DNA of 58,128 nucleotides from the NCBI GenBank assembly GCA_044892505.1, contig CM097884.1:125989873-126048000 (forward strand), written 5' to 3'. The translations under genes and the position numbers were made by a program. This document shows, piece by piece, positions 26,561 through 58,128 of this stretch (the first letter of the stretch is position 1; each line of letters begins with the position of its first letter). The notes beneath the pieces were generated by a model. The model ran no database searches. It saw nothing but the letters and a program-made list of their open reading frames with translations, and was not told the origin of the DNA. The DNA comes from Schmidtea nova (Eukaryota).

Positions 26561-29500
26561 ATATAAGTAGTATATAATTTTCCGTTTTAATTAGATTTGT
26601 AGAATATAAGAAAATAAAATTATAAATTAGCATAATAAATTAAATATAAAAGTTATTAATTAGCCTGAGTGTAAATTTCATATTTAAGAATGATTGAAAA
26701 TTGAAATATAAAATATTTATTGAATGTTTGTGTATGAATATTCCCTTTTCAATTAGTAACTCGTGCTAGCAAAAATATAAAATATAATAAAGAAAATTAT
26801 TTGAATGATATAAAAAATTTGTATTGTGTTTAAAAATAGTTTTTTTAACATTATGGATGTTCTTAATTTACGAAACAAAACAAATACTAGAACCAATCTG
26901 CCAAAATTGTAATAAATCATATTTCTGCTCTGATTCTTCATTTATAGGTGGTTGTTCATGAACTAGATTTTAATTTTGTAATGTCGATAATGTCGCAAAA
27001 TGTAGCCCAGCTTATTATACTAAAAAATGGCAGCAATTTAAGGTCATGGCCTTACAGTGCTCACAAATACCCCCCCTACATCTTTGACTTGTCCCCTCAA
27101 GTAATCCATGATTTTCTTTGAAAATACCTTTTATGAGCTAACCGCGAAAAGTTTATTTGTCTTGGTTGTTATGAATAAAAAGATGTTTTGGAATTTCACC
27201 TTATTTATTATATTAGACTCCAATTATTGAGCACACCATGCATTTAAATCAGATATATTAATTATATTTTAATAAAACAATTTTTTAGGTTTTTTAAAAA
27301 TAATGTACTCGATTTTGGTATGTATGAATTGCTTTAAAGCTAAAGAAGAATATTTGAGTTAGGATCACGGAAATGTTTTTTAATACTATAAATTAAGAGG
27401 ATTTAATTTTGTGTTACTGAAATAAATATTATTTGGAAATTTAATTATGAGTTTTTATTGTACCGATTAAAATGATGTTGCAACTAACAATGACAATCAT
27501 ATTATATGTATCAACCCGTATATTTTTGCCAAATCATCTTTAATATATGAGCCATATTTTACACAATAATCAAACAAAAAATGCTGAAACATGAAAGAGA
27601 GAATAGCGTGACCTTACTGTAATGTAGACTTAACTAATTTCAAACAAATGATAATATTTGTATTTACTATTTCTGGCTTCATTTTATAAAATTTATCATC
27701 CGAATAACAAATTTTAGGATCTTTTTTTAAATATCAGTAAGATTTAAATTANNNNNNNNNNNNNNNNNNNNNNNNNNNNNNNNNNNNNNNNNNNNNNNNN
27801 NNNNNNNNNNNNNNNNNNNNNNNNNNNNNNNNNNNNNNNNNNNNNNNNNNNNNNNNNNNNNNNNNNNNNNNNNNNNNNNNNNNNNNNNNNNNNNNNNNNN
27901 NNNNNNNNNNNNNNNNNNNNNNNNNNNNNNNNNNNNNNNNNNNNNNNNNNNNNNNNGATGACTATAGATCAAAATTTTTTTTTAAACAATAAAAAAAAAT
28001 TGATCTATAGTCATCATTATGAGAATTATTGATAATAATAATAAAAAAAGATCNNNNNNNNNNNNNNNNNNNNNNNNNNNNNNNNNNNNNNNNNNNNNNN
28101 NNNNNNNNNNNNNNNNNNNNNNNNNNNNNNNNNNNNNNNNNNNNNNNNNNNNNNNNNNNNNNNNNNNNNNNNNNNNNNNNNNNNNNNNNNNNNNNNNNNN
28201 NNNNNNNNNNNNNNNNNNNNNNNNNNNNNNNNNNNNNNNNNNNNNNNNNNNNNNNNNNNNNNNNNNNNNNNNNNNNNNNNNNNNNNNNNNNNNNNNNNNN
28301 NNNNNNNNNNNNNNNNNNNNNNNNNTAATTAGAGAAAAATTAAGTCATTATTTTTCATTTAGAAAACTAAATTCAATGATTCCAACCCCTCCACGCAGCA
28401 ATCTCAAAGCAGTTTCACAAGTCTTCATTTTGACAAACGGTCAGAATCCATTTCCCAGAATAAAAACAATCCTCAAATTCAAGAAAACTGAAAAGCTAAA
28501 AATATAAATAAATTATTCCAAACCATTTTATTTATCTTTATCAATTTACACTACAATCATTCGTTTATTTGTAATAATAATTTATTATGCTAATAATGAA
28601 TGTAACATCATAGATGATAAATATTTAATATTATTTTCTTTTGTTAATATTGTGTTGTTTTATATTTATGAATTGCAAATATATTTTGTAGAAGTTATTA
28701 TGATTTTATATAACTATTTTTTAACATAAAAAGAAATTTGCATAATTATTTTTAATTGTGAAATCTTAAAAATAATAAAGTACCGTTTATTTTGAAAATG
28801 AGACAAGTCCATTTGATTATCTTTAATTTTCTTAAGACATTTTTAAACTACATTTTGTATAACTGCAAAACACACAAAAGCTGGCTACATTAAGGTCGAT
28901 GTTTGTTTGAACTTTTAATGAGCTTTTTAAAGGTTATCACGAAGGTTATCAACTTCAGGACGTTAATCGCCATGGATGTTCCAAGTTACTGCTATCAATA
29001 GGTTAGAAATCTTTCTATTCACTAGACGTGTTAAGCAATAATTGTAATCTTGCTCGGAACTAGATTCGAAAGACTTGATCCTTGATCTTAAGGGAAAAAA
29101 TTGTAGAGGTCAAGGTTATATTAAAAGGTTTTAACAAAAGTCGATTATTAATTTTTATTTTATGTTCTCTATTTTGTTGCTGACCCCATATCATATATAT
29201 TCAAGCTAAATACAAAATTTTTCAAATAATTCAGCCTTGAAATCTCTCTGTCGTGTTCCATTGGTAACTATCCTAGGCACTGCAATAATGGTACATGCTC
29301 GGTCACACTAATAATTTTATTAAAAGAAATCATCAAGTGTCAATAAATTCGTTAGGAAAAATTGCAAATGTTATTTTATAGTTTAAATGAAGCCAACAGA
29401 TAATATTGCTGGGTTCATGGACGGGTTGGTAAAGAGGCTAATGATGGCTAGGGATCTCCCATCCATGATCATGCATAAAATGTCGTAAGTTACACTCGAG

Positions 29501-29841
29501 CGCCCTTGATTATTTCCCTTGATAACCAAGTTGGTGATGCGCAGGGTGATTAAACAATGAGGGGCATGTGAGCACTATTGCTAGGACTACTCCCCCTTTA
29601 TGTTTACGGGTTCACGCGGCCGTGGAAGGACTTACGCAATTATTGTTCTATTGTGTGTGTGATGTCATGTAATTATCAAAAACAAAATTTAAGCACAACG
29701 AAACTACTAATACGATAATACTTAAGCTACTCCTTTCGTTGTGTGACGGGTAATTTAAATTTAATTAAATGAATTAGGTAATTGAAGGAAAACATCAGAA
29801 ATAACAACAACAAAACAAAACGAGTAAAAATTTAATTGAGT

Positions 29842-30449
29842 TCAAATTCTGACATCGTATTTTATTTGTAATATAAATTCTTTGAATATTCCTTCAGGAG
29901 GGAACATCTCTGCTAACCACTCGGCTTCCGACATTTCTGCCATCGTGGTTACTTGTGTCCGCAATTGCTGGGAAAACAGCTTCCTTTGGCGACGGCGCTT
30001 GGAGCCGATTCGTTTTCGCTTATTCGGTTTTCCGGCGGGAGTTGGTGCAGTGGTGGTTTCCCCCCGACTCTGCGTCGTTGTTGCCTCGAGTCCATCGGTG
30101 TCTGTACTGATTGAGCAGGCCACTTTCCGTTCTCCTACCCAATTCTGGTAAGTAATGGGTCGGATTTGTGCTTTTAATTCGGACTCGATAAACGAAGTCG
30201 TCACCGAATGGAGGCATCGGCGCAACTCAATTTTTGTTGCTTCCCATTCGGTGCGATAATCGTCAGCTGTCCTTTGAGCCCTTTCTGTCCGACTCATCTG
30301 CTCCTTCATGCGAGCTGGTGCGAACCAGCTGGTCCGTAAATGCTGAATCTGAGCTTCTGCTTTGGCTCGTAAGGCTTTTTCTTGGTTTAGCTCCTTTTCC
30401 AATGCTCGGCGGGTTCTCCACGCCTTGTCCAATTCTCGCTGTTGGCTAG
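29842..30449 (-). CDS. LTR-encoded ORF B, 3' LTR copy: coiled-coil plus basic R/K-rich segment; likely start MTETSQQ
   Basis: ORF track 29842-30537. The internal ATG at 30449 follows ttgttatttag|T. KPNKRKRIGSKRRRQRK is NLS/RNA-binding-like. The protein is identical in both LTRs. Confidence 0.55.
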
Positions 30450-30651
30450 TTTCCGTCATACTAAATAACAAACCCAATTTATAATGCATCAAACATGTTA
30501 CCAAGATTAATATTATCCGTCGAAGGTAAAAAATCACATGATTAAATAAATAGAAATAATTTTAACTAAGGAAAATCAAAAAAAAAAAACACGGATCAAC
30601 ACCATTTAATTTATTGAAATCATTTAGTTTATAAAAATGTGAATATAATGT

Positions 30652-31152
30652 TTAGTGGAAAACACTTCGCTTGAGGCCGTGAACGGGAGTAATATGCAAC
30701 CCGTGATTGACTGGATTTCTTCGGATGTGAGCCATCGAACAGTTTAGTTTGGGGCGTCCATGGCACGTTTTCGGTAGGTGATTCGGAATCAATCCGAATT
30801 TAAGCAACTTGAGCGGTGAGACATATCCCCAATAGATCACTGTCGTTGGATTTCCTTCGCTGTCTGACACCACTATGACGAACAGAGCTGTCGTCTCCCG
30901 GTCTCTTTCGTCCTGAATTTCCCATCCGGGGCCTCCTCGATATACGATGGTATCCAATCCCCCGGTCCAAATTGAGAATGGACATTTCTTTCCTAGTTCC
31001 CACCGCCATTTATACATCAACGCATTTAGCGTTCTGAGGAGTTCCTGTGGGAGCGACTTCAATTTCTGCTGTTGCGTCCGGATTAGAGGATTTTCGACCC
31101 GTGCCGCCTGACGTTGAGTTGTTAGAAATTTATCCAGTATCGTTGCTTTCAT
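30652..31152 (-). CDS. LTR-encoded ORF A, 3' LTR copy: 166-aa unknown protein
   Basis: Open 166-codon frame with higher GC than its flanks; the ATG directly follows tttttttttatcag|. Confidence 0.5.
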   Translation of the reverse strand: MKATILDKFLTTQRQAARVENPLIRTQQQKLKSLPQELLRTLNALMYKWRWELGKKCPFSIWTGGLDTIVYRGGPGWEIQDERDRETTALFVIVVSDSEGNPTTVIYWGYVSPLKLLKFGLIPNHLPKTCHGRPKLNCSMAHIRRNPVNHGLHITPVHGLKRSVFH

Positions 31153-32033
31153 CTGATAAAAAAAAATATAATGCTAATAAATTTTATTGTGACGAATCCG
31201 TAAATTTTGGTGGGACCTGATAAAAATGCTCTGCTCGTTGATCAATAACACAAAAAAATGTGAAAAGGAGGAATAAAAAAAATATTTTCCAAACTAGTCA
31301 ATTAACACCGTCGCTATGTACAGCGATCGGAATATTAAAATTTTACATATTGTTACCTGCGCTATGTACAGCGATCAGGTTACGATTTTACTTGTTTAAT
31401 CCGTAATGTCGATCCGAACATGTCGTTATTTATGTCTAAATTAAACCATAGTTGAAACATCGAAATCGTCTCGGTGTGTCCGGACATTATTTCGATTAGT
31501 TATGTTGATTCACAAAAATTCGCGTGTAGATGGAAAAAAAAATCGATCTAGTCGACCTGATAATTGATATTGTAGTTTGTTTTCGCCTATCTGATCGAAT
31601 ATTAATGTTAACCACTGTCTACAAAGTGTCCTTGTCCCTGCACAACTTTACCGTACCGTGAAACTTTCAAAACCAAAAATTTAAATCAAATAAAGAATAC
31701 CCATAAAAACTCTGCTCACCATCTTGTGGAACGGTGAAATCCCACATTTACGGCGTACTCCCTCGCAGCGTGAGCTACTGAGGAAGTGAATATATATGCA
31801 TAAGTAAAATAAATGAAATAATAAAATCATCAGAATCATTTACGATAAGTTATATTAAATAAAATCATAGGATCAATAAAACTTATAATGACAATCAAAA
31901 TAATTACTTCCACAGGTTTTCCAGATAGCTTTGAATAAATCGTAAAATAAACGCTTTCACAAAGTTCGTGAATTAATGTTTCTAGACAAAGTCTGTCGAC
32001 AAAATTAGTGTTGTGTTGTTATTTTCGGATCGG

Positions 32034-32075
32034 TATTTATACTGATCCAGTTGGTCAGATTGACCAATCAGGATC
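32034..32075 (-). promoter_or_regulatory. Candidate LTR core promoter: palindromic CCAAT element followed by a TATA box
   Basis: Near-palindrome GATCCAGTTGGTCAGATTGACCAATCAGGATC (32044-32075), then TATAAATA on the minus strand at 32041-32034. An Inr-like CTAATTT lies near 32006. Confidence 0.5.
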
Positions 32076-32636
32076 AGGCCGTCCATCAAAGTAATTTTGT
32101 TATTTTATTTTAATATAAACCATTTTAAATTTCCGGTTCAGATTTCTCGCTGGGTGGTCTCGATTTTTTCAAGTAATTAACCAATTAATTGTACTTTTAT
32201 TTGATTTTATTTATAATTTTCTTATTTCAGACCCCCATACTGCTCGTTCCCGTGTCAATTTGATTTTCTTCCTTTGCTGGAAATTTAGTAATTATTATTT
32301 ATTATTTTATTTTAATTTTTAATTTAGGTTTTTCGAATGTTTTTGTGGTTATTATTTGTATCTATTGTTTGAATTAATACAATATCTTTGCCTTTTTAGA
32401 CCAATTGGTGGGCCCAACATCACTCGGGGACCCCTAAAATTGCGTCCCGCAATTAATTATACATAACTACTTATAACATCATACATAAAAAGTTTTACAG
32501 ATATATACATAAACACAAGAAAATCACTTAAGGTGATAGAATTTATACACATCATGAGATTTGTTATAGGATAGTTGAATATTATCAGATTATTGTCATA
32601 GGATAGTCAAAGGTTCATCAGAGATGTTCACAAAGT

Positions 32637-33197
32637 CTATTCGATCCTCCGGCTCGCATTGGGTTGGGTTTGAGTTCTCTCATTGATTGTAGCTAATTCG
32701 TAGTGGGTCTGAATTTGATCTAGATGTTTTCTCATACGTCTTTGGGTTCGGTTGTCTCGCCTTGATGTTTGATTGACGATGGTTTGTTTCTGTTTGAGGA
32801 TTTTTATCCGGTAGGAGGCGATCAGGATTGTGATTGCGATGGTAGTTATGCTGATTGAAAGGATTATGATGATTGCTATGATCCATTTTTCTTGATATTC
32901 TATTTCAGCTTGGGCTAGGCTTTTTATGGGCTCTCTACCTTCTTTCAGGGTTTTTTGGGTTTCTTTTAGTTTCAGTTGTTGGTTATCGAAGATTTGTTGG
33001 ATTTGATGATCTTGATTGTGGGGATATTTCTGTCGGAATTCGTTGATTTCTTTAATTACTTCTTCGATTAGGCTGTCTACTTTTTGGTAGGTTTTGTCGG
33101 GTAGAACTCGTAATTGGGTTTCGGTAAGTTGTAGATCTTCTCTCTGTAGGGTGATGGTTATTAACCATAGGAGTATTGGTATTGCGAGCTTTCTCAT
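32637..33197 (-). CDS. Accessory 186-aa type I membrane protein (signal peptide, helical ectodomain, TM, basic tail)
   Basis: N-terminal MRKLAIPILLWLITITL; TM WIIAIIIILSISITTIAITILIASY; A-rich codon use like the rest of the element. Confidence 0.75.
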   Translation of the reverse strand: MRKLAIPILLWLITITLQREDLQLTETQLRVLPDKTYQKVDSLIEEVIKEINEFRQKYPHNQDHQIQQIFDNQQLKLKETQKTLKEGREPIKSLAQAEIEYQEKWIIAIIIILSISITTIAITILIASYRIKILKQKQTIVNQTSRRDNRTQRRMRKHLDQIQTHYELATINERTQTQPNASRRIE

Positions 33198-33275
33198 TTC
33201 TATCTTTACATAGGAGTCAATACAGCTTGACGCTTTTTATTTTACATCATCTATTTACAATTGGTTTCCGCTCAT

Positions 33276-34337
33276 TTACACGAGGGTTTCGTTAGGTTCG
33301 TGAAAACCTTCGTCTTGAGGTTCCACCTGATTTATGGGGAGTGGCATCCATATTACCGTACTCCTCCACATTTCCACTTCCTCTCGGTATGTGTGGGATA
33401 TCTGAATCTCTTCATCTAATAAGTATTCCAGATAGTTCGCCTGCTCTGTTAGGGTTTCTATTTGTTTTTCTAGTTCTGCTAATTTTTTCTCTCTCTCTTC
33501 TTTCTCTATCATTTCGGTCACTGCTGCTGTGATACTTGTTTCCTTTGTGGGTACTGGTTTTTCTGTTAGCTTCTTTCTCAGTTCTTCGTTTTCTTTTGTC
33601 AAGTTGGTTATGTTCTCTTCATAACTCTGTTTTGCTTCTTCCATTCTTTCTTTGGTCCTTTTTAATTCTATTTTCTTCTGGGTAATCACTCCTTGATATC
33701 CATTTATATCTCTTTTCATGTTTTCCTCCTTGTGATTCCACATTCCGGTCAGCATACCTTTTAACTGTTCTTGATTGGCTAACTCCTCTCCCATTCTTTG
33801 CACTTGATAAGTTAGTTCTTTAATTTTCTTGGCTTGTTCTCTGATGAATTGTTGTCTTTTCTTACTCCATACCTTATTTGACGCTTCTTGACTGATCTTT
33901 TGCCCTAATTCCTCTTTTAATTCGTCGATCTCTTTAAACAGTTTCCAATCATCGCTGTACGCTGTTCGTTCAATTATCTCCCTGGCTTCCTTGTAAGAGT
34001 CTTTTGCCTCTTTCTTCCAATATCTTGCTTGTTCGGTGATTGACTGAATCTTATGGTCTGTTTTTATCTGTTGTCTATCTCTATCCTCTCGTCGCTCTTT
34101 CATCATCCCTTTGTAGTATTCGTTTTGTTGTCTTAGCAGTTTGTAGACTTCTTCTATTTTTTCTCGACTTTTATGATTCGTTTTCTCGGCTTCTCTTAGT
34201 GCTTGGGTTTGTCTTTCTAATTCCTCCTGTTTTCGATAATAGGCGTGAATCCATATCCCAATCCGCTCCATGTGATTTCTGATCATTTCGTCTTGATGTA
34301 CGGTTACTTCCTGTAAGGTTACCTCTATATTTCCCAT
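33276..34337 (-). CDS. Accessory 353-aa coiled-coil protein, function unknown
   Basis: Long E/K/Q/R heptad-like ORF in the element's sense orientation; no recognisable family motif. Confidence 0.8.
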   Translation of the reverse strand: MGNIEVTLQEVTVHQDEMIRNHMERIGIWIHAYYRKQEELERQTQALREAEKTNHKSREKIEEVYKLLRQQNEYYKGMMKERREDRDRQQIKTDHKIQSITEQARYWKKEAKDSYKEAREIIERTAYSDDWKLFKEIDELKEELGQKISQEASNKVWSKKRQQFIREQAKKIKELTYQVQRMGEELANQEQLKGMLTGMWNHKEENMKRDINGYQGVITQKKIELKRTKERMEEAKQSYEENITNLTKENEELRKKLTEKPVPTKETSITAAVTEMIEKEEREKKLAELEKQIETLTEQANYLEYLLDEEIQISHTYREEVEMWRSTVIWMPLPINQVEPQDEGFHEPNETLV

Positions 34338-34448
34338 TTCTATAATTACAGATAAAAGAATATTTAATCAGTTTTTATTTTTATTGTTTTTGATTATTTG
34401 TTATTTCATATTGTTTTATACAGTTTATTTACATGGTTACTTTCTTCA

Positions 34449-35825: not shown

Positions 35826-35919
35826 TTTCTACAATAATATATACATTCGACTTGTCATTTATTTTTGGATTTTTTCTTGTTTTTATTTTTACATATTTAC
35901 AGTTTTCCGCTTTATTTAT

Positions 35920-36276
35920 CTATGGCTCATTCGTTGAATCTGGTTCCGCTTCGTTGTTTAATCTATTTATTACCCAACTCATCCATCCTTCTTCGGATCC
36001 TTCTCTTTCTCCTCGTGTTAAATGGTTTATTTCTATTGCTTGTCTTTGATTGGTGTTGCTTATCGTTTGATTTTCCCTGGTGAGTTCAGTTATCGCTCTT
36101 TGTTGTTCCTCTATTCTGTGTAATTGTTCGAAACAATTGTTATAACTTTCTGATAGTAACATTTGTTTTTCCGCTAATTGGTTCTGTAATGAGTTGACTG
36201 TTCGTACTAATAAATCGCATTGTGCTTTCCATCTCATAGCCATAGTTATTTCGGTTGTTTCGTCCTGTTCGGTCAT
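35920..36276 (-). CDS. Accessory 118-aa coiled-coil protein
   Basis: First ORF after the polyprotein; heptad-like Q/E/L pattern; same TAG-AAA-ATG start context as its neighbours. Confidence 0.65.
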   Translation of the reverse strand: MTEQDETTEITMAMRWKAQCDLLVRTVNSLQNQLAEKQMLLSESYNNCFEQLHRIEEQQRAITELTRENQTISNTNQRQAIEINHLTRGEREGSEEGWMSWVINRLNNEAEPDSTNEP

Positions 36277-51291: not shown

Positions 51292-51450
51292 TTTTACTGA
51301 TGGTGCATCTCCTATTTGTAAGAACGCTTATCTGGGCAGTTTCGTTACTCCTGGAATCATCTGGTTTACTTTATTGAATAGTATTTCCACCTTTTCTTTT
51401 GCGTTATATTGGAATCGAAACATATGGTCGTTGGGCATGATTACCATCAT
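49084..51450 (-). other. Three ubiquitin-like (beta-grasp) domains at ~51220-51450, ~49888-50130 and ~49084-49290
   Basis: Each starts with a hydrophobic strand, x-P-N-x-D/H, a second strand, then T/K-I/V-x-x-L/I. The best example is LKISVELPNEDTKEIEVVADCTIKELINVI...LYKIGIWDNHQTIHVI. Confidence 0.6.
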
Positions 51451-53310
51451 TCCTTTTTTCCAAATTTTTCTTCTCTCTTCCTGGTTTATCTCAGTTTCCC
51501 CTTCCTTTTTTATTTCTTTTTCTACTTCTTCATCTTTTTGTACTATTTCTTTTAGACTTTCGTTGTTGGTTGGATTCGGATTTATTTCTAATGTGGTTTC
51601 TTTCTCGCGAGTGTCTGTTTGGTTTGTTGCTCTTAGCATGTTAATTCTTAGAGGTTGTCGCTCTCTTTCTTGCTGTTTTTGTTCATCCTCTCTTTGTATT
51701 CTTGCCCATTCCTGAGCGTGTCGTGCTTGACTTTCTCGATTCAATCGTTCATTTTCGCTTTCTATTTTTCTCATCATGCTAATTTGCTGTTGATTGGTTT
51801 GCGAATTTCCTCTCGTCGTATTGTTTATCAGTTCCGTCAACCTTTGAACTTCTTGCATCAAATGTATTTCTTTGGTGGTAGTTTTGTTCTGATTATTATT
51901 ATTGTTGTTTTGTTGGTTTCCATAATCTGGTCGGTTTACGGTATTTGCTTGATTTCCGTAATTTGGTCGGTTCCCATTACTCTGCCAGTTTCCTCGCTGA
52001 TTACTTTTTTGTCCGCAATTTCTTGAATAGTGACCAGGTCGTCCGCAATTAAAACAGATTATCGTAGAACATCTACTCTCCGAGTGTCCTTTAACTCCAC
52101 ATTTTCCGCAATTCAAATTTTGATAGCATTCTTGTTGCCAATGTCCCAATTTTCCACATGTTTTACATTGTTTTGTTTGTCCTTGAGGATTGTAATTGTT
52201 TTGGTTTCTAAAGTTTTGCACTTTATTTCCTTCGTTCCTTCGTTGAGGGGGTGGTCGGTTTAATTGTTGCGAATTTGGAATGTGATTGTTGAGATTTACT
52301 TCTGGTTCGATTTGCGCCGTGTCCATGGCTAAATAAATTCTACCCTCACTTCCTATCATGTGCAGTTCGAATCTGTTAGCTGTTTCTAGTGCTTGGTCTA
52401 GGGTTTTACATCCTTGGCATCCCACTTGTGCTCTTATGTCGGGTCTTCTTAGTCCTCCTATGAAGATAGCTGCCATTAACTCCTCGTTTATTGGACCTCC
52501 ATCCTTGAATACCGATTTTGCTAATTTTTTCAATTCGCTCGCGTATACCGCATTAGATTCGTTCATCTTTTGTTTCCTCATTGAAAATTCTATGAATGCT
52601 TCGCTTAGCACTTTATTTATTCCAAATGTTTGTTGGAAAAAGTCCTTTATCGCTGGCCAGTCTGCAGGTGGATTGGTACCGTTTTTTGCTTCCAAATATA
52701 GGTCCAATGCGCTATCTTTCAAATATAACTGTATTCTACTTGCTGTTGTCTCAGCTTTCCATTTGCATACTTCCACGAATATGCCAAATTCCTTTAGAAA
52801 AATTTCTAATTTACTCGCATCTCCGTTAAACGGTTCTCCTGAAAATTTATCCTTTATTTCTTCTCTTGGTTCACCCATTTCAATTCCGCTGTCTTGAGTT
52901 ATTTTACTTTCGTTTCCTCTTGTTTCTAGTTCGTTGTTATGTTCGTCTTCTGTTCCACTCGAGCTTGAATCGCTTTCAGTTTCTCTTATTACCACGTTAT
53001 CTGATATTATACTCTCGTTATCACTCTCGTTGGTTTCTACCTCTGGTTCTACCTCGTTTTCTACTTCTTCGATATTATCGTTGTTAGTTTCGTCGCTTTC
53101 TATTTCGCTTGTTTGGTTCTCCTTGGGTTCCGCTTGGTTCTCTTTGTTACTTGAGCTGTTGCTTACTACTGACAATTTATCGTTTTCGATAATTGATTTA
53201 TCTCTTATTATTTTCCTCGCTTTACTCCCTTGTGGGTTTTTGTGGTTATCTTTGCCGGCTTTCTGCTTTTTTGTTGGCTTTATTGCGACACTCTTTGCTC
53301 CTTTTCTCAA
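51328..53310 (-). CDS. gag: Gag: acidic N-terminal extension, capsid-like domain, three CCHC knuckles
   Basis: FNGDASKLEIFLKEF capsid start; CKTCGKLGHWQQEC, CGKCGVKGHSESRC and CFNCGRPGHYSRNC (52015-52167). The track start is TTG; the first ATG is ~143 codons in. Confidence 0.93.
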   Translation of the reverse strand: MRKGAKSVAIKPTKKQKAGKDNHKNPQGSKARKIIRDKSIIENDKLSVVSNSSSNKENQAEPKENQTSEIESDETNNDNIEEVENEVEPEVETNESDNESIISDNVVIRETESDSSSSGTEDEHNNELETRGNESKITQDSGIEMGEPREEIKDKFSGEPFNGDASKLEIFLKEFGIFVEVCKWKAETTASRIQLYLKDSALDLYLEAKNGTNPPADWPAIKDFFQQTFGINKVLSEAFIEFSMRKQKMNESNAVYASELKKLAKSVFKDGGPINEELMAAIFIGGLRRPDIRAQVGCQGCKTLDQALETANRFELHMIGSEGRIYLAMDTAQIEPEVNLNNHIPNSQQLNRPPPQRRNEGNKVQNFRNQNNYNPQGQTKQCKTCGKLGHWQQECYQNLNCGKCGVKGHSESRCSTIICFNCGRPGHYSRNCGQKSNQRGNWQSNGNRPNYGNQANTVNRPDYGNQQNNNNNNQNKTTTKEIHLMQEVQRLTELINNTTRGNSQTNQQQISMMRKIESENERLNRESQARHAQEWARIQREDEQKQQERERQPLRINMLRATNQTDTREKETTLEINPNPTNNESLKEIVQKDEEVEKEIKKEGETEINQEERRKIWKKGMMVIMPNDHMFRFQYNAKEKVEILFNKVNQMIPGVTKLPR

Positions 53311-53920
53311 CTGGATTACTTTTATATTATCAATTTTCTTGTCCTATCTATTATCGTTTTTCTGATTCTTCTTGTTGTTTGATTGATTTGATTGATTTGT
53401 ATATCTAAAATACAAAGGTCCTCAACGATACCTTATTGTTATCGTCGCGCTTTTATTCCCTTTCTTTCGGGATTACTTATTACTGGGTTTTCATTATTTC
53501 CCATTCTCAGATTCCCCTTTATTTTTAGTCTATTTAAATTATCTATAGACTGGTCACAATTATCTATTTATGTCGTAATAATTATCTATGTTTTATCAAA
53601 TCCATTACTTTTCCCACAGTTTCCCAATTTATTGGTCGCTCGAGCGCTCTAATTCCCTGAGTCTTTCTGACTCGTTTATCATTATTTTATCATCTTTATT
53701 CATTATTCCCTGCTAGCAATCGTTTTACTCATTCTGCCGGTTGTTCCGGTCAGCTCGAATTTTTATTATTCTCCTTGCATGCTTTACTTAAGGTTGCATA
53801 ATCAGCTTTACTCGCATTTCTTAACTACTAGTGCGCACTATTCTAAATCTCGTCGACGATTACACTATGGGTCTATATTCCCTCGGTTACTATTTATCCG
53901 GATATCTCTATAATCCACTA

Positions 53921-54200
53921 TGGCTCTTTTGGCCTCAATTTATATCTCACATGGCTCTATTGGCCTCATTTTACTATCTCAAACGGCTCTATTGGCCTCA
54001 ATTTAATATCTCACATGGCTCTATTGGCCTTAATTTAATATCTCACATGGCTCTATTGGCCTCAAATTAATCTCTCCATAACGCCTAGCTAGGTCATTCA
54101 ATAAGGCTCGTTGGCCTCAACCCTTTTTTTCAAGGGACAAACCGCTAATAACCCTTTGCTTCAAGGGACAACTCTAATAACCCTTTGTTTCAAGGGACAA
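53921..54200. repeat. Leader tandem repeats: five ~32-bp units plus a partial sixth, then three CCCTT-N6-AAGGG hairpins
   Basis: Units of atctcacatggctctattggcctcaattta at 53921-54070 and a core at 54105-54120; ccctt..ttcaagggacaa x3 at 54121-54200. Confidence 0.9.
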
Positions 54201-54684
54201 ATCTCGTATAACTTTACTTAACCGGTTAATCACAATTCCCTACTTCGCTAGCGATTAAAACTTCTCAGCTGAGTTATAACTACTTCTATGCGAGCTGACT
54301 ATGCACCTTTTATTCTCTCAAAATTGTCATTTATCTCTTTATTCTATCATAACTAATTCCTGATCAGTCTGCTTCAACTTTTCATTTATTTTTTCTCTAT
54401 GCGCGCTTTACTCCATCGAGATTTCCCTATCTCTCTCCCCAACCAAAATATACAAAAAGATCGCGTTGGTCTATTAATGCAGGATGTGGTGATCAATCAC
54501 ATCACAAAAACTTTCCAACATTTGCGATGGGCCCCTTTCCATACACCCTGACTAGGTTGATCAATCGGTACCCCCCAATGGATTCTTATCGGACTACTTT
54601 GCAGTAGCTCAAAAATTATTTAAATACAATGATTGTTCCCATGATTCACCATTCGATCTTTTACTAATCAACTCTAAACATTTA

Positions 54685-55188
54685 TTACAAATAAACTATA
54701 ATTTTTTCATTCACGGTAAAGTTGCACATCGGACACCGGTCACACTTGCTGGCACAGATCTTACAAAAACGGAAATGTCCGCAAGGTAAAAACATAATTT
54801 GTATCTCGTTGTTTTCACATATATAGCACTGTCGGTATTTTTTCGCTGCTTCTACCCCTTGCGCCCTCCATCGATTGTATGTTGGGGTTAATTGTTGTTC
54901 TATTTGTCTGCATCTAATGTTTAGCTCCGCATTCTCTAGTCGTGCTCGGTACCATTTGTAGCGGGTTTTTATGTCGATTTTACTTGTTCTTTCTGTTATC
55001 TTTATTAATTCATCTGTTTCCTCGGTCTGTGTTGTGGGTTCTTGAAATTCAATTTCTCTAAATCGGTTTATTTTCTTGCCAATTGTTGCTAATGTTTCGT
55101 TTTCTGTGTTGAGAAATTCTTCGATTTCCTTCAGTTTTTCCTCCATTTGCTGAATAAATAATCGTTTTAACTTTGTTGTTTTTATCAT
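54685..55188 (-). CDS. 167-aa coiled-coil plus IAP/MDM-type C-terminal RING protein upstream of gag
   Basis: CYICENNEIQIMFLPCGHFRFCKICASKCDRCPMC matches the IAP-type RING pattern; no BIR motif seen. Confidence 0.85.
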   Translation of the reverse strand: MIKTTKLKRLFIQQMEEKLKEIEEFLNTENETLATIGKKINRFREIEFQEPTTQTEETDELIKITERTSKIDIKTRYKWYRARLENAELNIRCRQIEQQLTPTYNRWRAQGVEAAKKYRQCYICENNEIQIMFLPCGHFRFCKICASKCDRCPMCNFTVNEKIIVYL

Positions 55189-55502
55189 TTTTAAAGTAGT
55201 AATATGTCTCGTTTTGTGAATTTAATATTTATTTAAAGTAGTAATATGTTTCGTTTTGTATCTTTTAGCATTTATTTACTCTCCCCGTGTTTCCGAAAAT
55301 TGTCGTCCCGACAAATTGTTTATGCATGCATTCGATTTTTATAACTTTACTTTTATTTGCTGTTGTGTTTGTTGTTTATTTTTGTACATCATTTAGATTT
55401 AATTACCAATTTTCTGTTTCTATTAAATTTATTCACACGACACGAGCACTTTAAACTTCTCTGCAGATTTTTCATTCACCTTTTTCCGATAAAACGAAGT
55501 TG

Positions 55503-55520
55503 ATCCCGGCTGAGCCCCCA
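55503..55520 (-). promoter_or_regulatory. Primer-binding site, tRNA-Pro type
   Basis: TGGGGGCTCAGCCGGGAT lies 6 nt inside the 5' LTR and is a 16/18 match to the classical tRNA-Pro PBS TGGGGGCTCGTCCGGGAT. Confidence 0.85.
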
Positions 55521-55961
55521 AATTTATGCTGGGTTCATGGACGGGTTGGTAAAGAGGCTAATGATGGCTAGGGATCTCCCATCCATGATCATGCATAAAA
55601 TGTCGTAAGTTACACTCGAGCGCCCTTGATTATTTCCCTTGATAACCAAGTTGGTGATGCGCAGGGTGATTAAACAATGAGGGGCAGGTGAGCACTATTG
55701 CTAGGACTACTCCCCCTTTATGTTTACGGGTTCACGCGGCCGTGGAAGGACTTACGCAATTATTGTTCTATTGTGTGTGTGATGTCATGTAATTATCAAA
55801 AACAAAATTTAAGCACAACGAAACTACTAATACGATAATACTTAAGCTACTCCTTTCGTTGTGTGACGGGTAATTTAAATTTAATTAAATGAATTAGGTA
55901 ATTGAAGGAAAACATCAGAAATAACAACAACAAAACAAAACGAGTAAAAATTTAATTGAGT

Positions 55962-56569
55962 TCAAATTCTGACATCGTATTTTATTTGTAATATAAATTC
56001 TTTGAATATTCCTTCAGGAGGGAACATCTCTGCTAACCACTCGGCTTCCGACATTTCTGCCATCGTGGTTACTTGTGTCCGCAATTGCTGGGAAAACAGC
56101 TTCCTTTGGCGACGGCGCTTGGAGCCGATTCGTTTTCGCTTATTCGGTTTTCCGGCGGGAGTTGGTGCAGTGGTGGTTTCCCCCCGACTCTGCGTCGTTG
56201 TTGCCTCGAGTCCATCGGTGTCTGTACTGATTGAGCAGGCCACTTTCCGTTCTCCTACCCAATTCTGGTAAGTAATGGGTCGGATTTGTGCTTTTAATTC
56301 GGACTCGATAAACGAAGTCGTCACCGAATGGAGGCATCGGCGCAACTCAATTTTTGTTGCTTCCCATTCGGTGCGATAATCGTCAGCTGTCCTTTGAGCC
56401 CTTTCTGTCCGACTCATCTGCTCCTTCATGCGAGCTGGTGCGAACCAGCTGGTCCGTAAATGCTGAATCTGAGCTTCTGCTTTGGCTCGTAAGGCTTTTT
56501 CTTGGTTTAGCTCCTTTTCCAATGCTCGGCGGGTTCTCCACGCCTTGTCCAATTCTCGCTGTTGGCTAG
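55962..56569 (-). CDS. LTR-encoded ORF B, 5' LTR copy
   Basis: Identical translation to the 3' LTR copy. Confidence 0.55.
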
Positions 56570-56769
56570 TTTCCGTCATACTAAATAACAAACCCAATTT
56601 ATAATGCATCAAACATGTTACCAAGATTAATATTATCCGTCGAAGGTAAAAAATCACATGATTAAATAAATAGAAATAATTTTAACTAAGGAAAATCAAA
56701 AAAAAAACACGGATCAACACCATTTAATTTATTGAAATCATTTAGTTTATAAAAATGTGAATATAATGT

Positions 56770-57270
56770 TTAGTGGAAAACACTTCGCTTGAGGCCGTGA
56801 ACGGGAGTAATATGCAACCCGTGATTGACTGGATTTCTTCGGATGTGAGCCATCGAACAGTTTAGTTTGGGGCGTCCATGGCACGTTTTCGGTAGGTGAT
56901 TCGGAATCAATCCGAATTTAAGCAACTTGAGCGGTGAGACATATCCCCAATGGATCACTGTCGTTGGATTTCCTTCGCTGTCTGACACCACTATGACGAA
57001 CAGAGCTGTCGTCTCCCGGTCTCTTTCGTCCTGAATTTCCCATCCGGGGCCTCCTCGATATACGATGGTATCCAATCCCCCGGTCCAAATTGAGAATGGA
57101 CATTTCTTTCCTAGTTCCCACCGCCATTTATACATCAACGCATTTAGCGTTCTGAGGAGTTCCTGTGGGAGCGACTTCAATTTCTGCTGTTGCGTCCGGA
57201 TTAGAGGATTTTCGACCCGTGCCGCCTGACGTTGAGTTGTTAGAAATTTATCCAGTATCGTTGCTTTCAT
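56770..57270 (-). CDS. LTR-encoded ORF A, 5' LTR copy
   Basis: One amino-acid difference from the 3' copy (VIHWG vs VIYWG). Confidence 0.5.
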   Translation of the reverse strand: MKATILDKFLTTQRQAARVENPLIRTQQQKLKSLPQELLRTLNALMYKWRWELGKKCPFSIWTGGLDTIVYRGGPGWEIQDERDRETTALFVIVVSDSEGNPTTVIHWGYVSPLKLLKFGLIPNHLPKTCHGRPKLNCSMAHIRRNPVNHGLHITPVHGLKRSVFH

Positions 57271-58128
57271 CTGATAAAAAAAAATATAATGCTAATAAAT
57301 TTTATTGTGACGAATCCGTAAATTTTGGTGGGACCTGATAAAAATGCTCTGCTCGTTGATCAATAACACAAAAAAAATGTGAAAAGGAGGAATAAAAAAA
57401 ATATTTTCCAAACTAGTCAATTAACACCGTCGCTATGTACAGCGATCGGAATATTAAAATTTTACATATTGTTACCTGCGCTATGTACAGCGATCAGGTT
57501 ACGATTTTACTTGTTTAATCCGTAATGTCGATCCGAACATGTCGTTATTTATGTCTAAATTAAACCATAGTTGAAACATCGAAATCGTCTCGGTGTGTCC
57601 GGACATTATTTCGATTAGTTATGTTGATTCACAAAAATTCGCGTGTAGATGGAAAAAAAAATCGATCTAGTCGACCTGATAATTGATATTGTAGTTTGTT
57701 TTCGCCTATCTGATCGAATATTAATGTTAACCACTGTCTACAAAGTGTCCTTGTCCCTGCACAACTTTACCGTACCGTGAAACTTTCAAAACCAAAAATT
57801 TAAATCAAATAAAGAATACCCATAAAAACTCTGCTCACCATCTTGTGGAACGGTGAAATCCCACATTTACGGCGTACTCCCTCGCAGCGTGAGCTACTGA
57901 GGAAGTGAATATATATGCATAAGTAAAATAAATGAAATAATAAAATCATCAGAATCATTTACGATAAGTTATATTAAATAAAATCATAGGATCAATAAAA
58001 CTTATAATGACAATCAAAATAATTACTTCCACAGGTTTTCCAGATAGCTTTGAATAAATCGTAAAATAAACGCTTTCACAAAGTTCGTGAATTAATGTTT
58101 CTAGACAAAGTCTGTCGACAAAATTAGT

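What the first reader, a model, noticed from the sequence alone, without database searches (positions are those of the whole stretch)
29407..58128. Giant, young, env-bearing gypsy 'complex retrovirus' with a coherent apoptosis/TNF-signalling toolkit
Seen: a ~29-kb LTR element whose non-core cargo is an IAP-type RING, ubiquitin-like domains, a Bcl-2-like domain, ankyrin repeats, FN3-like receptors and a full TRAF, plus an Env. Established: TRAFs, cIAP RINGs, IkB-type ankyrins and Bcl-2 proteins act in death-receptor/NF-kB/apoptosis control, and large DNA viruses (pox-, herpes-, baculo-, polydnaviruses) capture them. Inference: this is an infectious invertebrate retrovirus-like agent with a DNA-virus-style immunomodulatory arsenal. 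From memory, giant 'Burro' gypsy elements with apoptosis-related domains were reported in the planarian Schmidtea mediterranea (Grohme et al. 2018), so part of the cargo may be known. The Env placement, receptor units and accessory-gene cassette are the likeliest new aspects.
Basis: partly seen in the sequence, partly recalled or inferred. Interest (0 to 1): 0.95.

Follow-up and report, generated by a model that had tools for sequence, protein, structure and literature searches.

The report
Giant Burro-type planarian retrovirus-like element

Summary
The element is real. It lies on the minus strand and its 99.8%-identical LTRs (at least 2.6 kb) bracket about 23.5 kb. It has a tRNA-type primer site and a gag part with three CCHC knuckles. 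A 4,962-codon stop-free frame holds a class III (Monjiviricetes-type) fusion glycoprotein, PR-RT-RH-IN (best match Ty3) and two ankyrin blocks. Separate intact ORFs encode an IAP-type RING protein and a full TRAF.

The claimed Bcl-2-like, ubiquitin-like and FN3 domains could not be confirmed: Pfam and PDB searches were silent, no homologues were found, and AlphaFold models were too poor. The 'FN3 receptors' are two paralogous units, each bounded by a signal-like stretch and a membrane anchor, built from seven copies of a ~90-residue four-cysteine module of unassigned fold.

The headline is published (Jurka 2007; Grohme 2018; Arkhipova & Yushenova 2019), including env in frame between gag and pol, the apoptosis/ubiquitin cargo and the provirus hypothesis. 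Features I did not find in the literature I could read:
- the C-terminal membrane units
- a small type-I membrane ORF
- two ORFs inside the LTR
- seven distant relatives in metagenome assemblies with the same gag-env-pol single-ORF layout

Infectivity is not shown. I did not fetch other copies, so no copy census was made.

The parts
55527..58128 (-). 5' LTR (upstream LTR of the minus-strand element), cut by the window end. It carries copies of the two LTR ORFs at 56770-57270 and 55962-56657.
   Evidence: 99.8% identical to 29407-32009 over 2,604 aligned positions. Ends ...CA at 55527.
55499..55520 (-). Primer-binding site: 22 nt beginning TGG, 6 nt downstream of the 5' LTR.
   Evidence: Read directly. 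It is complementary to an RNA ending in CCA, as expected of a tRNA 3' end. The matching tRNA was not identified, and the window holds no tRNA gene.
54685..55188 (-). Upstream accessory ORF, 167 aa, with a C-terminal IAP-type RING. It has no BIR domain.
   Evidence: Pfam zf-C3HC4_3 E 3.7e-11. Best PDB matches are the RINGs of cIAP2, XIAP and cIAP1, E 3e-10 to 9e-9.
53920..54215 (-). Tandem repeats in the leader between the RING ORF and gag (32 nt x 4.9 copies; 29 nt x about 3 copies).
   Evidence: Tandem Repeats Finder.
36403..52878 (-). Main gag-env-pol-cargo reading frame, from the first ATG of the gag part to the final stop (about 5,490 codons). It has no frameshifts and one in-frame stop between the gag part and the rest. 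That stop is either a natural gag terminator or a single break.
   Evidence: the ORF listing. The two stretches share one frame. The longest uninterrupted stretch is 4,962 codons.
52015..52167 (-). Gag nucleocapsid: three CCHC zinc knuckles.
   Evidence: Pfam zf-CCHC E 6e-9. Three C-x2-C-x4-H-x4-C matches. PDB matches are retroviral nucleocapsid proteins.
47938..52014 (-). Unassigned region between the gag knuckles and env, largely helical or disordered in the model. This is the position where Burro elements are reported to carry SUMO-like and BCL2-like motifs.
   Evidence: No Pfam hit at E<=1, no PDB hit and no homologues. AlphaFold mean pLDDT 35.
46087..47937 (-). Env: a class III-type fusion glycoprotein module (polyprotein residues 1119-1735) with its own Met and signal peptide, 14 ectodomain cysteines and a membrane anchor.
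   Evidence: Pfam PF24664 Monjiviricetes_fusion E 2.3e-70, covering profile positions 5-579 of 653. Hydrophobic segments. All 14 cysteines invariant in 8 of 8 relatives.
45259..45531 (-). Retroviral-type aspartic protease.
   Evidence: Pfam RVP E 6.7e-7. One D-S/T-G motif is present.
44119..44595 (-). Reverse transcriptase.
   Evidence: Pfam RVT_1 E 9.7e-37. Y-x-D-D motif present. Best PDB match is Ty3 Gag-Pol 7q5b, E 5e-117.
43543..43932 (-). RNase H (Ty3/gypsy type).
   Evidence: Pfam RT_RNaseH E 7e-38 and RT_RNaseH_2 E 1.6e-36.
42649..43218 (-). Integrase (H2C2 zinc domain plus catalytic core).
   Evidence: Pfam Integrase_H2C2 E 6.4e-20 and rve E 1.6e-10. The Ty3 and foamy-virus integrases are among the PDB matches.
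41542..41853 (-). Ankyrin repeat block 1.
   Evidence: Pfam Ank_2 E 3.9e-15. PDB ankyrin matches.
40486..40947 (-). Ankyrin repeat block 2.
   Evidence: PDB sequence matches to designed and natural ankyrin repeats, best E 3e-7. Pfam reports a second Ank_2 stretch.
38089..39873 (-). C-terminal membrane unit 1: a signal-like hydrophobic stretch, four ~90-residue four-cysteine modules and a membrane anchor.
   Evidence: Hydrophobicity. Paralogous to unit 2. Module alignment A1. No homologue among 1.84 billion representative proteins.
36592..37869 (-). C-terminal membrane unit 2: a signal-like stretch, three modules, a membrane anchor and a 62-residue tail.
35920..36276 (-). Accessory ORF, 118 aa, acidic and coiled-coil-like. 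No family assigned.
   Evidence: the ORF listing. Only weak coiled-coil-type Pfam hits. 45.7% A on the coding strand, like the rest of the element.
34449..35825 (-). Accessory ORF, 458 aa: a complete TRAF (RING, TRAF zinc fingers, linker, MATH/TRAF-C).
   Evidence: Pfam MATH_2 E 8.4e-21 and zf-TRAF E 2.3e-6. PDB: TRAF3, TRAF5 and TRAF2 TRAF-C at E 4e-23 to 2e-20; TRAF6, TRAF5 and TRAF2 RING-zinc-finger at E 5e-13 to 3e-10.
33276..34337 (-). Accessory ORF, 353 aa, cysteine-free, charged and coiled-coil-like. No family assigned.
   Evidence: Pfam Filament E 7.6e-4, below its cut-off. No meaningful PDB match.
32637..33197 (-). Accessory ORF, 186 aa: a small type-I membrane protein (signal peptide, ~85-residue ectodomain, membrane anchor, basic tail).
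   Evidence: Hydrophobic segments at residues 1-18 and 106-134. Translation. No Pfam family.
29407..32009 (-). 3' LTR, the part that can be paired with the 5' LTR. Its true upstream edge lies between 32010 and 32636, with a candidate TG... start near 32418. It holds two ORFs (30652-31152, 166 aa; 29842-30537, 231 aa) in GC-rich islands.
   Evidence: ORF lengths were reached by 0 and 1 of 500 dinucleotide shuffles. The islands are 46-56% GC against 26-33% in the spacers. The 231-aa ORF has a coiled coil and an Arg/Lys-rich run.

Best explanation
The region is one full-length, very recently integrated copy of a giant Ty3/gypsy endogenous retrovirus-like element of the Burro kind described in dugesiid planarians.

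Shown by the sequence:
- Two near-identical LTRs and a tRNA-type primer site.
- A gag part with three zinc knuckles.
- A huge reading frame holding env, then PR-RT-RH-IN, then two ankyrin blocks, then two membrane-protein units.
- One accessory ORF upstream of gag (IAP-type RING), four downstream of the main frame (one a full TRAF), and two inside the LTR.

Inferred mechanism:
- It replicates like any LTR retroelement. LTR-driven transcription is followed by tRNA-primed reverse transcription inside Gag particles and then by integration.
- Hydrophobic segments alternate regularly along the main frame: signal then anchor around env, then signal then anchor twice more at the C-terminus. This suggests the product is threaded through the ER membrane as a polytopic polyprotein. 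It would then be cut by signal peptidase as well as by the element's own protease.
- Alternatively, env is read from a spliced message that starts at its own Met.
- The class III fusogen would let particles pass between cells. In an animal where only stem cells divide, and where BURRO1 RNA is seen mainly in differentiated cells under PIWI control, that would be a route back into the heritable lineage.
- The TRAF, the IAP-type RING E3 and the ankyrin blocks would act on host TRAF/ubiquitin-dependent signalling and cell-death control in the producing cell. So would the Bcl-2-like segment reported for relatives, if it is present here.
For: Structure and youth:
- LTR pair 99.8% identical; PBS.
- 4,962-codon stop-free frame, no frameshifts in the main frame, and all the accessory ORFs listed run uninterrupted from an ATG to their stop.

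Gypsy membership:
- PR-RT-RH-IN order with Pfam RT_RNaseH and Integrase_H2C2.
- Best PDB match is Ty3 Gag-Pol, E 5e-117.

Env:
- Pfam PF24664 E 2.3e-70; own Met, signal peptide and anchor.
- 14 of 14 ectodomain cysteines invariant across 8 sequences that share only 35-40% identity.
- Seven giant relatives have CCHC-env-PR-RT-RH-IN in one ORF.

Cargo:
- RING, TRAF and ankyrin.
- All cargo ORFs share the element's unusual 43-46% A on the coding strand. This argues for long residence in the element, not a recent chimera.

Match to published Burro (PMC6431247):
- Giant ORF of 4,873-5,140 aa and three CCHC knuckles in S. mediterranea.
- MATH_TRAF_C, ankyrin and IAP-related motifs.
- Env in frame between gag and pol, with hits to mononegavirus glycoproteins.
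- Accessory ORFs that can alternate with polyprotein subdomains.
- Tandem repeats (marked in that paper's Fig. 2 legend).

Host: flank above 70% A+T, as reported for the S. mediterranea genome (PMC11410931).

Expression of the family: BURRO1 RNA is tissue-enriched and rises on smedwi-2 knock-down (PMC8532177).
Against: - Identity to Burro1-4 at the nucleotide level was not tested. I had no reference sequence and fetched none.
- The layout differs from both layouts described in text. Burro1 has TRAF inside the polyprotein and the D. tigrina element has it in an upstream ORF. Here TRAF is a downstream ORF.
- Total length is about 29 kb, not above 30 kb.
- The Bcl-2-like, SUMO-like and dUTPase-like motifs reported for Burro gave no Pfam signal here.
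- One in-frame stop separates the gag part from the rest. The RNA after it shows no stimulatory structure (z -0.06), so this copy may not make the full product.
- Nothing here shows particles, glycoprotein processing, splicing, or any effect on host signalling.
- The host species was not identified.
Confidence: 0.85

Rival explanations
1. It is a separate, so far undescribed family of giant env-bearing gypsy elements. It would be related to Burro but not one of Burro1-4, perhaps from another flatworm, with its own arrangement of cargo.
For: - TRAF is a downstream accessory ORF and the RING an upstream one. This matches neither published text description.
- No close protein relative was returned for the polyprotein. 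The best relatives are only 35-45% identical.
- The N- and C-terminal cargo regions have no homologue at all in the protein collections.
Against: - Three CCHC knuckles, ORF size, cargo types, env position and the AT-rich host all fit S. mediterranea Burro.
- The published text does not describe the Burro-2, -3 and -4 layouts in detail, so a mismatch with Burro1 proves little.
- Planarian genome ORFs may simply be missing from the protein collections searched.
Confidence: 0.2
2. It is an intracellular retrotransposon only. The env-like segment and the membrane units would be retained for some non-infectious role, or be relics, and the element would never leave the cell.
For: - Env sits inside the polyprotein frame rather than in a separate gene.
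- One in-frame stop lies upstream of it.
- No evidence of particles or transmission exists in the papers I could read.
- According to the review, copy numbers run to thousands. Germline or stem-cell retrotransposition alone can achieve that.
Against: - Env keeps its own Met, signal peptide, anchor and all 14 cysteines through divergence down to 35% identity, in eight lineages. That is hard to explain without selection on a folded, membrane-inserted glycoprotein.
- The same argument holds for other env-carrying gypsy elements (PMC13524379).
Confidence: 0.25
3. It is an assembly artefact or a nested chimera. The cargo would come from host genes or other elements that landed inside an ordinary gypsy element or were mis-joined to it.
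For: - The flank contains seven N runs, so the assembly is not perfect.
- Planarians have a large expansion of host TRAF genes that could be donors (PMC6109357).
Against: - There are no N runs inside the element.
- Ankyrin, env and the membrane units lie inside one uninterrupted 4,962-codon frame.
- Base composition is uniform across core and cargo.
- No internal long direct repeats or extra LTRs were found.
- Accessory ORFs are packed 78-126 nt apart on the same strand.
- The literature reports the same cargo types in many copies.
Confidence: 0.03

Closest known systems
[quoted passage not shown] 2018; Arkhipova & Yushenova 2019, PMC6431247)
   Same: - Giant size and LTRs of kilobase length.
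- A reading frame of about 4,900-5,100 codons.
- Gag with three CCHC knuckles.
- Env in frame between gag and pol, with similarity to mononegavirus fusion glycoproteins.
- PR-RT-RH-IN, ankyrin repeats, TRAF/MATH and IAP-related motifs.
- Tandem repeats, accessory ORFs and an AT-rich host.
   Different: - TRAF is a separate ORF downstream of the polyprotein, not a polyprotein subdomain.
- The gag part is set off by one in-frame stop.
- The BCL2-like, SUMO-like and dUTPase-like motifs were not detectable here.
- Total length is about 29 kb.
- The C-terminal membrane units, the small membrane ORF and the LTR ORFs are not mentioned in the text I could read.
- Nucleotide identity was not tested.
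Burro-like element of Dugesia (Girardia) tigrina (Arkhipova & Yushenova 2019)
   Same: TRAF is encoded by an accessory ORF rather than in the polyprotein, and the ORF is giant (5,140 aa).
   Different: There the TRAF ORF is upstream, gag has two CCHC knuckles and a midasin-like segment is reported. None of these holds here.
GAG-ENV-POL 'errantiviruses' with class III (gB-type) Env in Platyhelminthes, Nematoda and Bryozoa (eLife 2026, PMC13524379)
   Same: Ty3/gypsy core, env placed between gag and pol, a class III fusogen and conserved cysteine bridges.
   Different: The passages I read mention neither giant size nor signalling cargo. Here Pfam assigns the env to the Monjiviricetes (rhabdo/chu-like) G family, not to gB.
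Seven unnamed giant polyproteins from ENA/JGI metagenome assemblies (P0001-P0007)
   Same: - CCHC-env-PR-RT-RH-IN in one 3,036-4,029-residue protein.
- 35-40% identity in env and 42-45% in pol.
- A signal-like stretch and an anchor flank env.
- Six of seven also have a signal/anchor-bounded unit after IN.
   Different: - No ankyrin, RING or MATH domains.
- Their N- and C-terminal regions are unrelated in sequence to this element.
- Some have two or three protease-like domains.
Cell-death and signalling genes captured by large DNA viruses (baculovirus IAPs, poxvirus ankyrin and Bcl-2-like proteins, polydnavirus ankyrins); comparison from established knowledge
   Same: The same classes of host-derived modules are carried by a mobile or viral genome: an IAP-type RING E3, ankyrin repeats and an apoptosis regulator.
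   Different: The carrier here is a reverse-transcribing LTR element. The RING protein has no BIR domain, so it is not an IAP. A whole TRAF adaptor is carried. No function has been tested.
Complex retroviruses and foamy-like fish endogenous retroviruses with accessory ORFs (Aiewsakun & Katzourakis 2017, cited in PMC6431247)
   Same: Accessory ORFs lie beyond gag-pol-env and the coding strand is A-rich.
   Different: The polymerase lineage differs (Ty3/gypsy, not Retroviridae). Env lies upstream of pol and in frame. Much of the cargo is fused into the polyprotein.

Membership tests
Ty3/gypsy (Metaviridae) LTR retroelement | Long terminal repeats flanking the coding region, ending TG...CA | tested here: met
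   LTR pair 99.8% identical. Both ends read ...CA. The TG start could not be fixed because the upstream LTR is cut by the window.
Ty3/gypsy (Metaviridae) LTR retroelement | Domain order PR-RT-RNase H-IN, with gypsy-type RNase H and an H2C2 integrase | tested here: met
   Pfam order RVP, RVT_1, RT_RNaseH, Integrase_H2C2, rve. Best PDB match is Ty3 Gag-Pol 7q5b at E 5e-117, ahead of caulimovirus, foamy-virus and MLV enzymes.
Ty3/gypsy (Metaviridae) LTR retroelement | tRNA primer-binding site next to the 5' LTR, and a target-site duplication | tested here: inconclusive
   A 22-nt TGG... site lies 6 nt after the LTR, but the tRNA was not identified. The target-site duplication cannot be tested because the 5' end lies outside the window.
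Burro giant retroelements of planarians | Host is a dugesiid planarian | not testable with these tools
   No eukaryotic genome collection was available. The flank is 69-79% A+T, in line with the above-70% A/T reported for S. mediterranea.
Burro giant retroelements of planarians | Giant size (internal region up to 25 kb, total above 30 kb) and a polyprotein of about 4,900-5,100 aa | tested here: met
   Internal region about 23.1-23.5 kb, total 28.7-29.35 kb, and a stop-free frame of 4,962 codons. This is slightly under 30 kb but within the family's described range ('up to').
Burro giant retroelements of planarians | Gag with CCHC knuckles (three in S. mediterranea) | tested here: met
   Three knuckles. 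The retrotrans_gag motif itself was not detected by Pfam.
Burro giant retroelements of planarians | Env-like segment in frame between gag and PR, similar to mononegavirus fusion glycoproteins | tested here: met
   PF24664 at E 2.3e-70, located upstream of PR in the same frame.
Burro giant retroelements of planarians | Cargo motifs: MATH/TRAF, ankyrin, IAP-related | tested here: met
   Their positions differ from the published Burro1 layout.
Burro giant retroelements of planarians | BCL2-like, Ubi2/SUMO-like and dUTPase-like motifs | tested here: inconclusive
   No Pfam hit at E<=1 to 5, no PDB hit, no homologues from which to build a profile, and an AlphaFold model too poor to use. HHpred, which the published work used, was not available.
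Burro giant retroelements of planarians | Nucleotide or protein identity to the Burro1-4 / GYPSM1 reference entries | not tested
   No tool returned a reference sequence.
Class III viral fusion glycoprotein (Monjiviricetes G type) | Sequence membership above the family threshold over most of the ectodomain | tested here: met
   237.8 bits against a 27-bit cut-off; profile positions 5-209 and 243-579 of 653. No PDB sequence-level match.
Class III viral fusion glycoprotein (Monjiviricetes G type) | Type-I membrane topology and a conserved disulfide framework | tested here: met
   Met plus signal peptide at residues 1119-1140 and an anchor at about 1700-1730. 14 of 14 cysteines invariant in 8 sequences.
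Class III viral fusion glycoprotein (Monjiviricetes G type) | Three-domain class III fold with internal fusion loops, and trimer formation | not tested
TRAF adaptor family | N-terminal RING, TRAF zinc fingers and a C-terminal MATH/TRAF-C domain | tested here: met
   Pfam MATH_2 E 8.4e-21 and zf-TRAF E 2.3e-6, with the RING weak. PDB: TRAF6, TRAF5 and TRAF2 RING-zinc-finger over residues 17-148, and TRAF3, TRAF5 and TRAF2 TRAF-C over residues 292-444.
IAP (inhibitor of apoptosis) family | At least one BIR domain | tested here: not met
   Pfam finds no BIR in the 167-aa ORF or anywhere in the element's ORFs. Only the C-terminal RING is IAP-like. It is an IAP-type RING protein, not an IAP.
Fibronectin type III domain | Significant match to an FN3 profile, or a confident seven-strand beta-sandwich model | tested here: inconclusive
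   Fn3_ELFN only at E 0.46-1.6. A profile of the seven modules finds nothing in PDB. The model has pLDDT 33.5, with seven strands predicted in one module at pLDDT 50-59. Foldseek best E is 0.075.

The most novel reading that the evidence does not exclude
This element, together with a wider clade of single-ORF gag-env-pol gypsy elements now visible in metagenome assemblies, makes a polytopic polyprotein. Besides the class III fusogen, one or two further type-I membrane glycoproteins are encoded downstream of integrase and released by host signal peptidase. In this element they are built from a cysteine-framed ~90-residue module with no known relatives. The envelope, or the surface of the producing cell, would then carry several element-encoded glycoproteins. 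Such a multi-glycoprotein design is not described for LTR retroelements in the literature I could read. In addition, the LTR would itself encode two proteins, one of them an arginine/lysine-rich coiled-coil protein that might be a regulator.
Probability: 0.2. Interest if true: 0.6.

Novelty: already known. Interest (0 to 1): 0.3.

Why it matters
Burro-type elements are the largest known LTR retroelements. They are a rare case of a reverse-transcribing element that has gathered the kind of host-signalling cargo otherwise seen in large DNA viruses.

This window offers a clean, almost unbroken copy in which the layout can be read directly.

The points worth passing on are modest:
- The C-terminal third is not featureless. 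It contains two paralogous membrane-protein units.
- Signal-like stretches and anchors alternate in a way that suggests a membrane-threaded polyprotein.
- The same gag-env-pol single-ORF design, with a post-integrase membrane unit, occurs in distant relatives from metagenome assemblies.
- The LTR itself appears to carry genes.

None of this changes the published picture. It would, however, sharpen the annotation of planarian genomes, where TRAF and ankyrin 'gene family expansions' may partly be element cargo.

Tried and rejected
Searches that found nothing:
- Homologues of the N-terminal 1,118 residues and of the C-terminal 1,183 residues: no hits in the search for homologous proteins. No hit for the C-terminal piece among 1.84 billion representatives. 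No alignments could therefore be built.
- AlphaFold on both pieces as single sequences: mean pLDDT 35 and 33.5, unusable. Foldseek with the C-terminal model: best E 0.075, discarded.
- A profile of the seven C-terminal modules against PDB: nothing.
- hhalign of the window's units against the post-integrase units of relatives: probability below 1%. The likeness is therefore positional only.
- PDB sequence searches of env, the gag body, the 353-aa ORF and the 166-aa LTR ORF: nothing useful.
- A dUTPase between PR and RT: no Pfam hit.
- tRNA genes and Rfam families in the window: none.
- Plus-strand ORFs inside the element, and ORFs in the flank: no Pfam family. I treat them as chance products of the skewed composition.

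Other negative results:
- A programmed read-through signal after the in-frame stop: the following 120 nt fold no better than shuffles.
- Grohme et al. 2018 is not held in the paper library. I know the Burro-2 to -4 layouts only through the 2019 review.
- Rejected: 'IkB-type' as a label for the ankyrins, because the matches are generic.
- Rejected: 'IAP' as a label for the RING ORF, because it has no BIR.

Slips, stated as required:
- I realised only later that this stop might count as a break. I have deleted nothing and do not give its place in this report.
- While planning, I recalled from memory the generic shape of a tRNA 3' end and a four-residue family motif of Bcl-2 proteins.
- The short generic patterns used (zinc knuckle, protease and polymerase catalytic motifs, dibasic site) came from general knowledge.

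Full report
**Layout of the window.** The first 29.4 kb are AT-rich (22-31% GC) and hold seven runs of N. I left the N runs untouched. From 29407 onward, GC rises to 35-41% and the plus strand becomes strongly T-rich over A. The coding strand is therefore the minus strand, with 43-46% A.

**LTRs and size.**
- A BLAST of the two ends shows one repeat pair, 29407-32009 against 55527-58128. It is 99.8% identical over 2,604 aligned positions (2 mismatches, 2 gaps).
- The pairing stops only because the window ends. The LTR is therefore at least 2,603 nt.
- Its upstream edge in the 3' copy must lie between 32010 and 32636. A candidate TG... start sits near 32418.
- The element is thus 28.7-29.35 kb long and is cut by a few hundred bases at its 5' end.
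- Both LTR copies end ...CA.
- Six bases after the 5' LTR comes a 22-nt stretch beginning TGG (55520-55499). It has the complementarity expected of a tRNA 3' end.
- The window holds no tRNA gene and no Rfam family.

**Core genes.**
- On the minus strand, the gag part has three CCHC knuckles and matches retroviral nucleocapsid proteins only.
- It lies in the same frame as a 4,962-codon stop-free stretch, with one in-frame stop between them and no frameshift.
- Pfam places the following domains in order along that stretch:
  - Monjiviricetes_fusion, E 2.3e-70, profile positions 5-579 of 653
  - RVP
  - RVT_1
  - RT_RNaseH
  - Integrase_H2C2 and rve
  - ankyrin repeats
- The PR-IN segment matches Ty3 Gag-Pol best (7q5b, E 5e-117). 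Caulimovirus, foamy-virus and MLV enzymes follow.
- The protease and polymerase catalytic motifs are present.
- This is a Ty3/gypsy element.

**Env.**
- The env segment begins with its own methionine and a canonical signal peptide at polyprotein residues 1119-1140.
- It has 14 ectodomain cysteines and ends in a membrane anchor at about residues 1700-1730.
- A search with this region found seven unnamed giant proteins (3,036-4,029 aa) from ENA and JGI metagenome assemblies.
- They share 35-40% identity in env and 42-45% from PR to IN, but nothing before env or after IN.
- The two scanned with Pfam (P0001, P0004) show env-PR-RT-RH-IN in one protein, and P0004 also carries a CCHC knuckle upstream of env. 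The precomputed domain lists for all seven include env, PR, RT, RNase H and IN, with CCHC listed for P0004 and P0005.
- All 14 cysteines are invariant in all eight sequences.
- Each relative has a hydrophobic stretch at the start of env, and six of the seven show an anchor-strength stretch near its end.
- Env in frame between gag and pol is therefore a conserved, constrained family trait. It is not an accident of this copy.

**Cargo that is confirmed.**
- The 167-aa ORF between the primer site and gag ends in a RING. Its best solved relatives are the RINGs of cIAP2, XIAP and cIAP1. It has no BIR domain, so it is an IAP-type RING protein and not an IAP.
- The 458-aa ORF downstream of the polyprotein is a complete TRAF. 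Its RING and zinc fingers resemble those of TRAF6, TRAF5 and TRAF2, and its TRAF-C domain resembles those of TRAF3, TRAF5 and TRAF2 (E 4e-23).
- Two ankyrin blocks lie after integrase. Their matches are generic, so 'IkB-type' is unsupported.

**Cargo that is not confirmed.**
- The stretch of about 1,350 residues between the gag knuckles and env is where the published Burro elements carry SUMO-like and BCL2-like motifs. Here it gave:
  - no Pfam hit at E<=1
  - no PDB hit
  - no homologues
  - an AlphaFold model of mean pLDDT 35
- That model predicts a run of helices just before env, which is compatible with a Bcl-2-like bundle but proves nothing.
- The PR-RT spacer gave no dUTPase signal.

**The 'FN3-like receptors'.**
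- After an acidic linker, the last 1,150 residues form two units.
- Each unit starts with a signal-like hydrophobic stretch (residues 3807-3824 and 4475-4489) and ends with a membrane anchor (4378-4401 and 4878-4900).
- The units are paralogues: 31% identity over 363 residues, E 3e-45.
- They contain four and three copies of a ~90-residue module with an invariant C-W...C...C framework.
- The sequence pattern and the strands predicted in the best-scoring module fit a small beta-sandwich. FN3 itself is not supported:
  - Fn3_ELFN E 0.5-1.6
  - a profile search of PDB was empty
  - the model's mean pLDDT was 33.5 and Foldseek's best E was 0.075
- The piece has no relative among 1.84 billion representative proteins.
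- Six of the seven distant relatives also carry a signal/anchor-bounded unit after integrase. It is unrelated in sequence.

**Other accessory ORFs.**
- Four ATG-initiated ORFs follow the polyprotein on the same strand, 78-126 nt apart:
  - a 118-aa acidic coiled-coil protein
  - the TRAF
  - a 353-aa cysteine-free coiled-coil protein
  - a 186-aa small type-I membrane protein with a signal peptide and an anchor
- All four have the element's 43-46% A. That speaks for long residence in the element and against a chimera.
- The LTR holds two further ORFs, of 166 and 231 aa. They sit in GC-rich islands (46-56% GC) separated by AT-rich spacers.
- Only 0 and 1 of 500 dinucleotide shuffles reached those lengths.
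- The longer LTR ORF has a coiled coil and an arginine/lysine-rich run.
- No family was found for any of these ORFs.

**How it most likely works.**
- Shown: the parts list above, the youth of the insertion, and the constraint on env.
- Inferred:
  - Replication is ordinary LTR-retroelement replication.
  - The regular alternation of start-transfer and stop-transfer segments (env, unit 1, unit 2) suggests a polyprotein threaded through the ER membrane. It would be cut by signal peptidase as well as by the element's protease. Env's own Met also allows a spliced message.
  - Fusogen-mediated passage between cells would matter in an animal whose heritable lineage is its stem cells. BURRO1 RNA is enriched in differentiated tissue and is held down by SMEDWI-2 (PMC8532177).
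  - The TRAF, the RING E3 and the ankyrins would interfere with host TRAF/ubiquitin signalling and cell death.
- The last three points are hypotheses. My confidence that the cargo modulates host signalling is about 0.4.

**Is this copy whole?**
- Counting breaks: no frameshifts and no insertions that I could detect.
- There is one in-frame stop, between the gag part and the rest of the main frame.
- The RNA after the stop has no notable structure (z -0.06).
- I cannot tell a natural gag terminator from a single break without other copies.

**Comparison with what is known.**
- Arkhipova & Yushenova 2019 (PMC6431247) summarise Jurka 2007 and Grohme et al. 2018. They describe for Burro/GYPSM1:
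  - thousands of copies
  - an internal region up to 25 kb
  - a 4,873-aa ORF with Gag and three CCHC knuckles
  - MATH_TRAF_C, SUMO-like, BCL2, env in frame between gag and pol with hits to mononegavirus glycoproteins ('the first case'), PR, dUTPase-like, RT, RH, IN, ankyrin and BIR
  - accessory ORFs that can alternate with polyprotein subdomains
  - the hypothesis that these are integrated proviruses meddling with apoptosis and ubiquitination
- GAG-ENV-POL gypsy elements with class III Env in Platyhelminthes are also reported (PMC13524379).
- This copy differs from the two layouts described in text in the position of TRAF and in the stop after the gag part.
- I found no mention of the C-terminal membrane units, the small membrane ORF or the LTR ORFs.
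- Grohme et al. is not in the library.

- I did not fetch DNA or cluster members of other copies or relatives by look-up, pattern or accession.
- As a result there is no copy census, no identity to reference Burro entries and no host identification. The statement about copy number rests on the literature.

**Verdict.** This is a real and well-preserved element. Four of the seven cargo calls were verified and three could not be. The headline is already published. Interest is low to moderate, and it rests on the undescribed C-terminal membrane units, the LTR ORFs and the wider clade.

Noticed in passing
window 4029-4266 (minus strand): A decayed reverse-transcriptase-like fragment in the host flank. 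It shows 32-42% identity to the element's RT by tblastx (E 5e-10) and matches Pfam RVT_1 at E 0.005. It is probably the remnant of an older retroelement in a locally GC-richer patch (4001-6000).
   Followed up: partly
window 3226-3757 / 20210-20691; 20152-20541 / 20770-21182; 16473-16813 / 17235-17572; 22548-22798 / 23741-23996: Several direct and inverted repeat pairs of 250-530 nt at 78-85% identity in the AT-rich flank. They look like foldback or MITE-like repeats. No ORF with a Pfam family lies in or near them.
   Followed up: partly
window 29842-30537 and 30652-31152 (copies at 55962-56657 and 56770-57270), minus strand: Two ORFs (231 and 166 aa) inside the LTR, in GC-rich islands separated by AT-rich spacers that carry TATAAA and AATAAA strings. 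Dinucleotide shuffles almost never reach these lengths. The longer ORF has a coiled coil and an Arg/Lys-rich run. No known family.
   Followed up: partly
window 32637-33197 (minus strand): The last accessory ORF encodes a 186-aa small type-I membrane protein with a signal peptide, a short ectodomain, an anchor and a basic tail. No family was found.
   Followed up: partly
proteins P0001-P0007 (metagenome assemblies): Distant relatives carry two or three protease-like domains, one of them after integrase. Six of seven have a signal/anchor-bounded unit downstream of integrase that is unrelated in sequence to the window's units.
   Followed up: partly
window 32637-55188 (minus strand): Every ORF between the LTRs, core and cargo alike, has 43-46% A on the coding strand. 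The LTR has about 31% A. This strand-asymmetric composition resembles that of A-rich retroviral genomes.
   Followed up: no
window 53920-54215: Two tandem-repeat arrays (32-nt and 29-nt units) lie in the 1.8-kb untranslated stretch between the RING ORF and the first ATG of gag.
   Followed up: no
window 3081-3225, 5879-6062, 7086-7219, 13966-14152, 24318-24447, 27752-27956, 28054-28325: Seven runs of N (130-272 nt), all in the flank and none in the element. Several 'ORFs' listed there (for example 28019-28507 and 5831-6133) run across N and are artefacts. The runs were left as they are.
   Followed up: no
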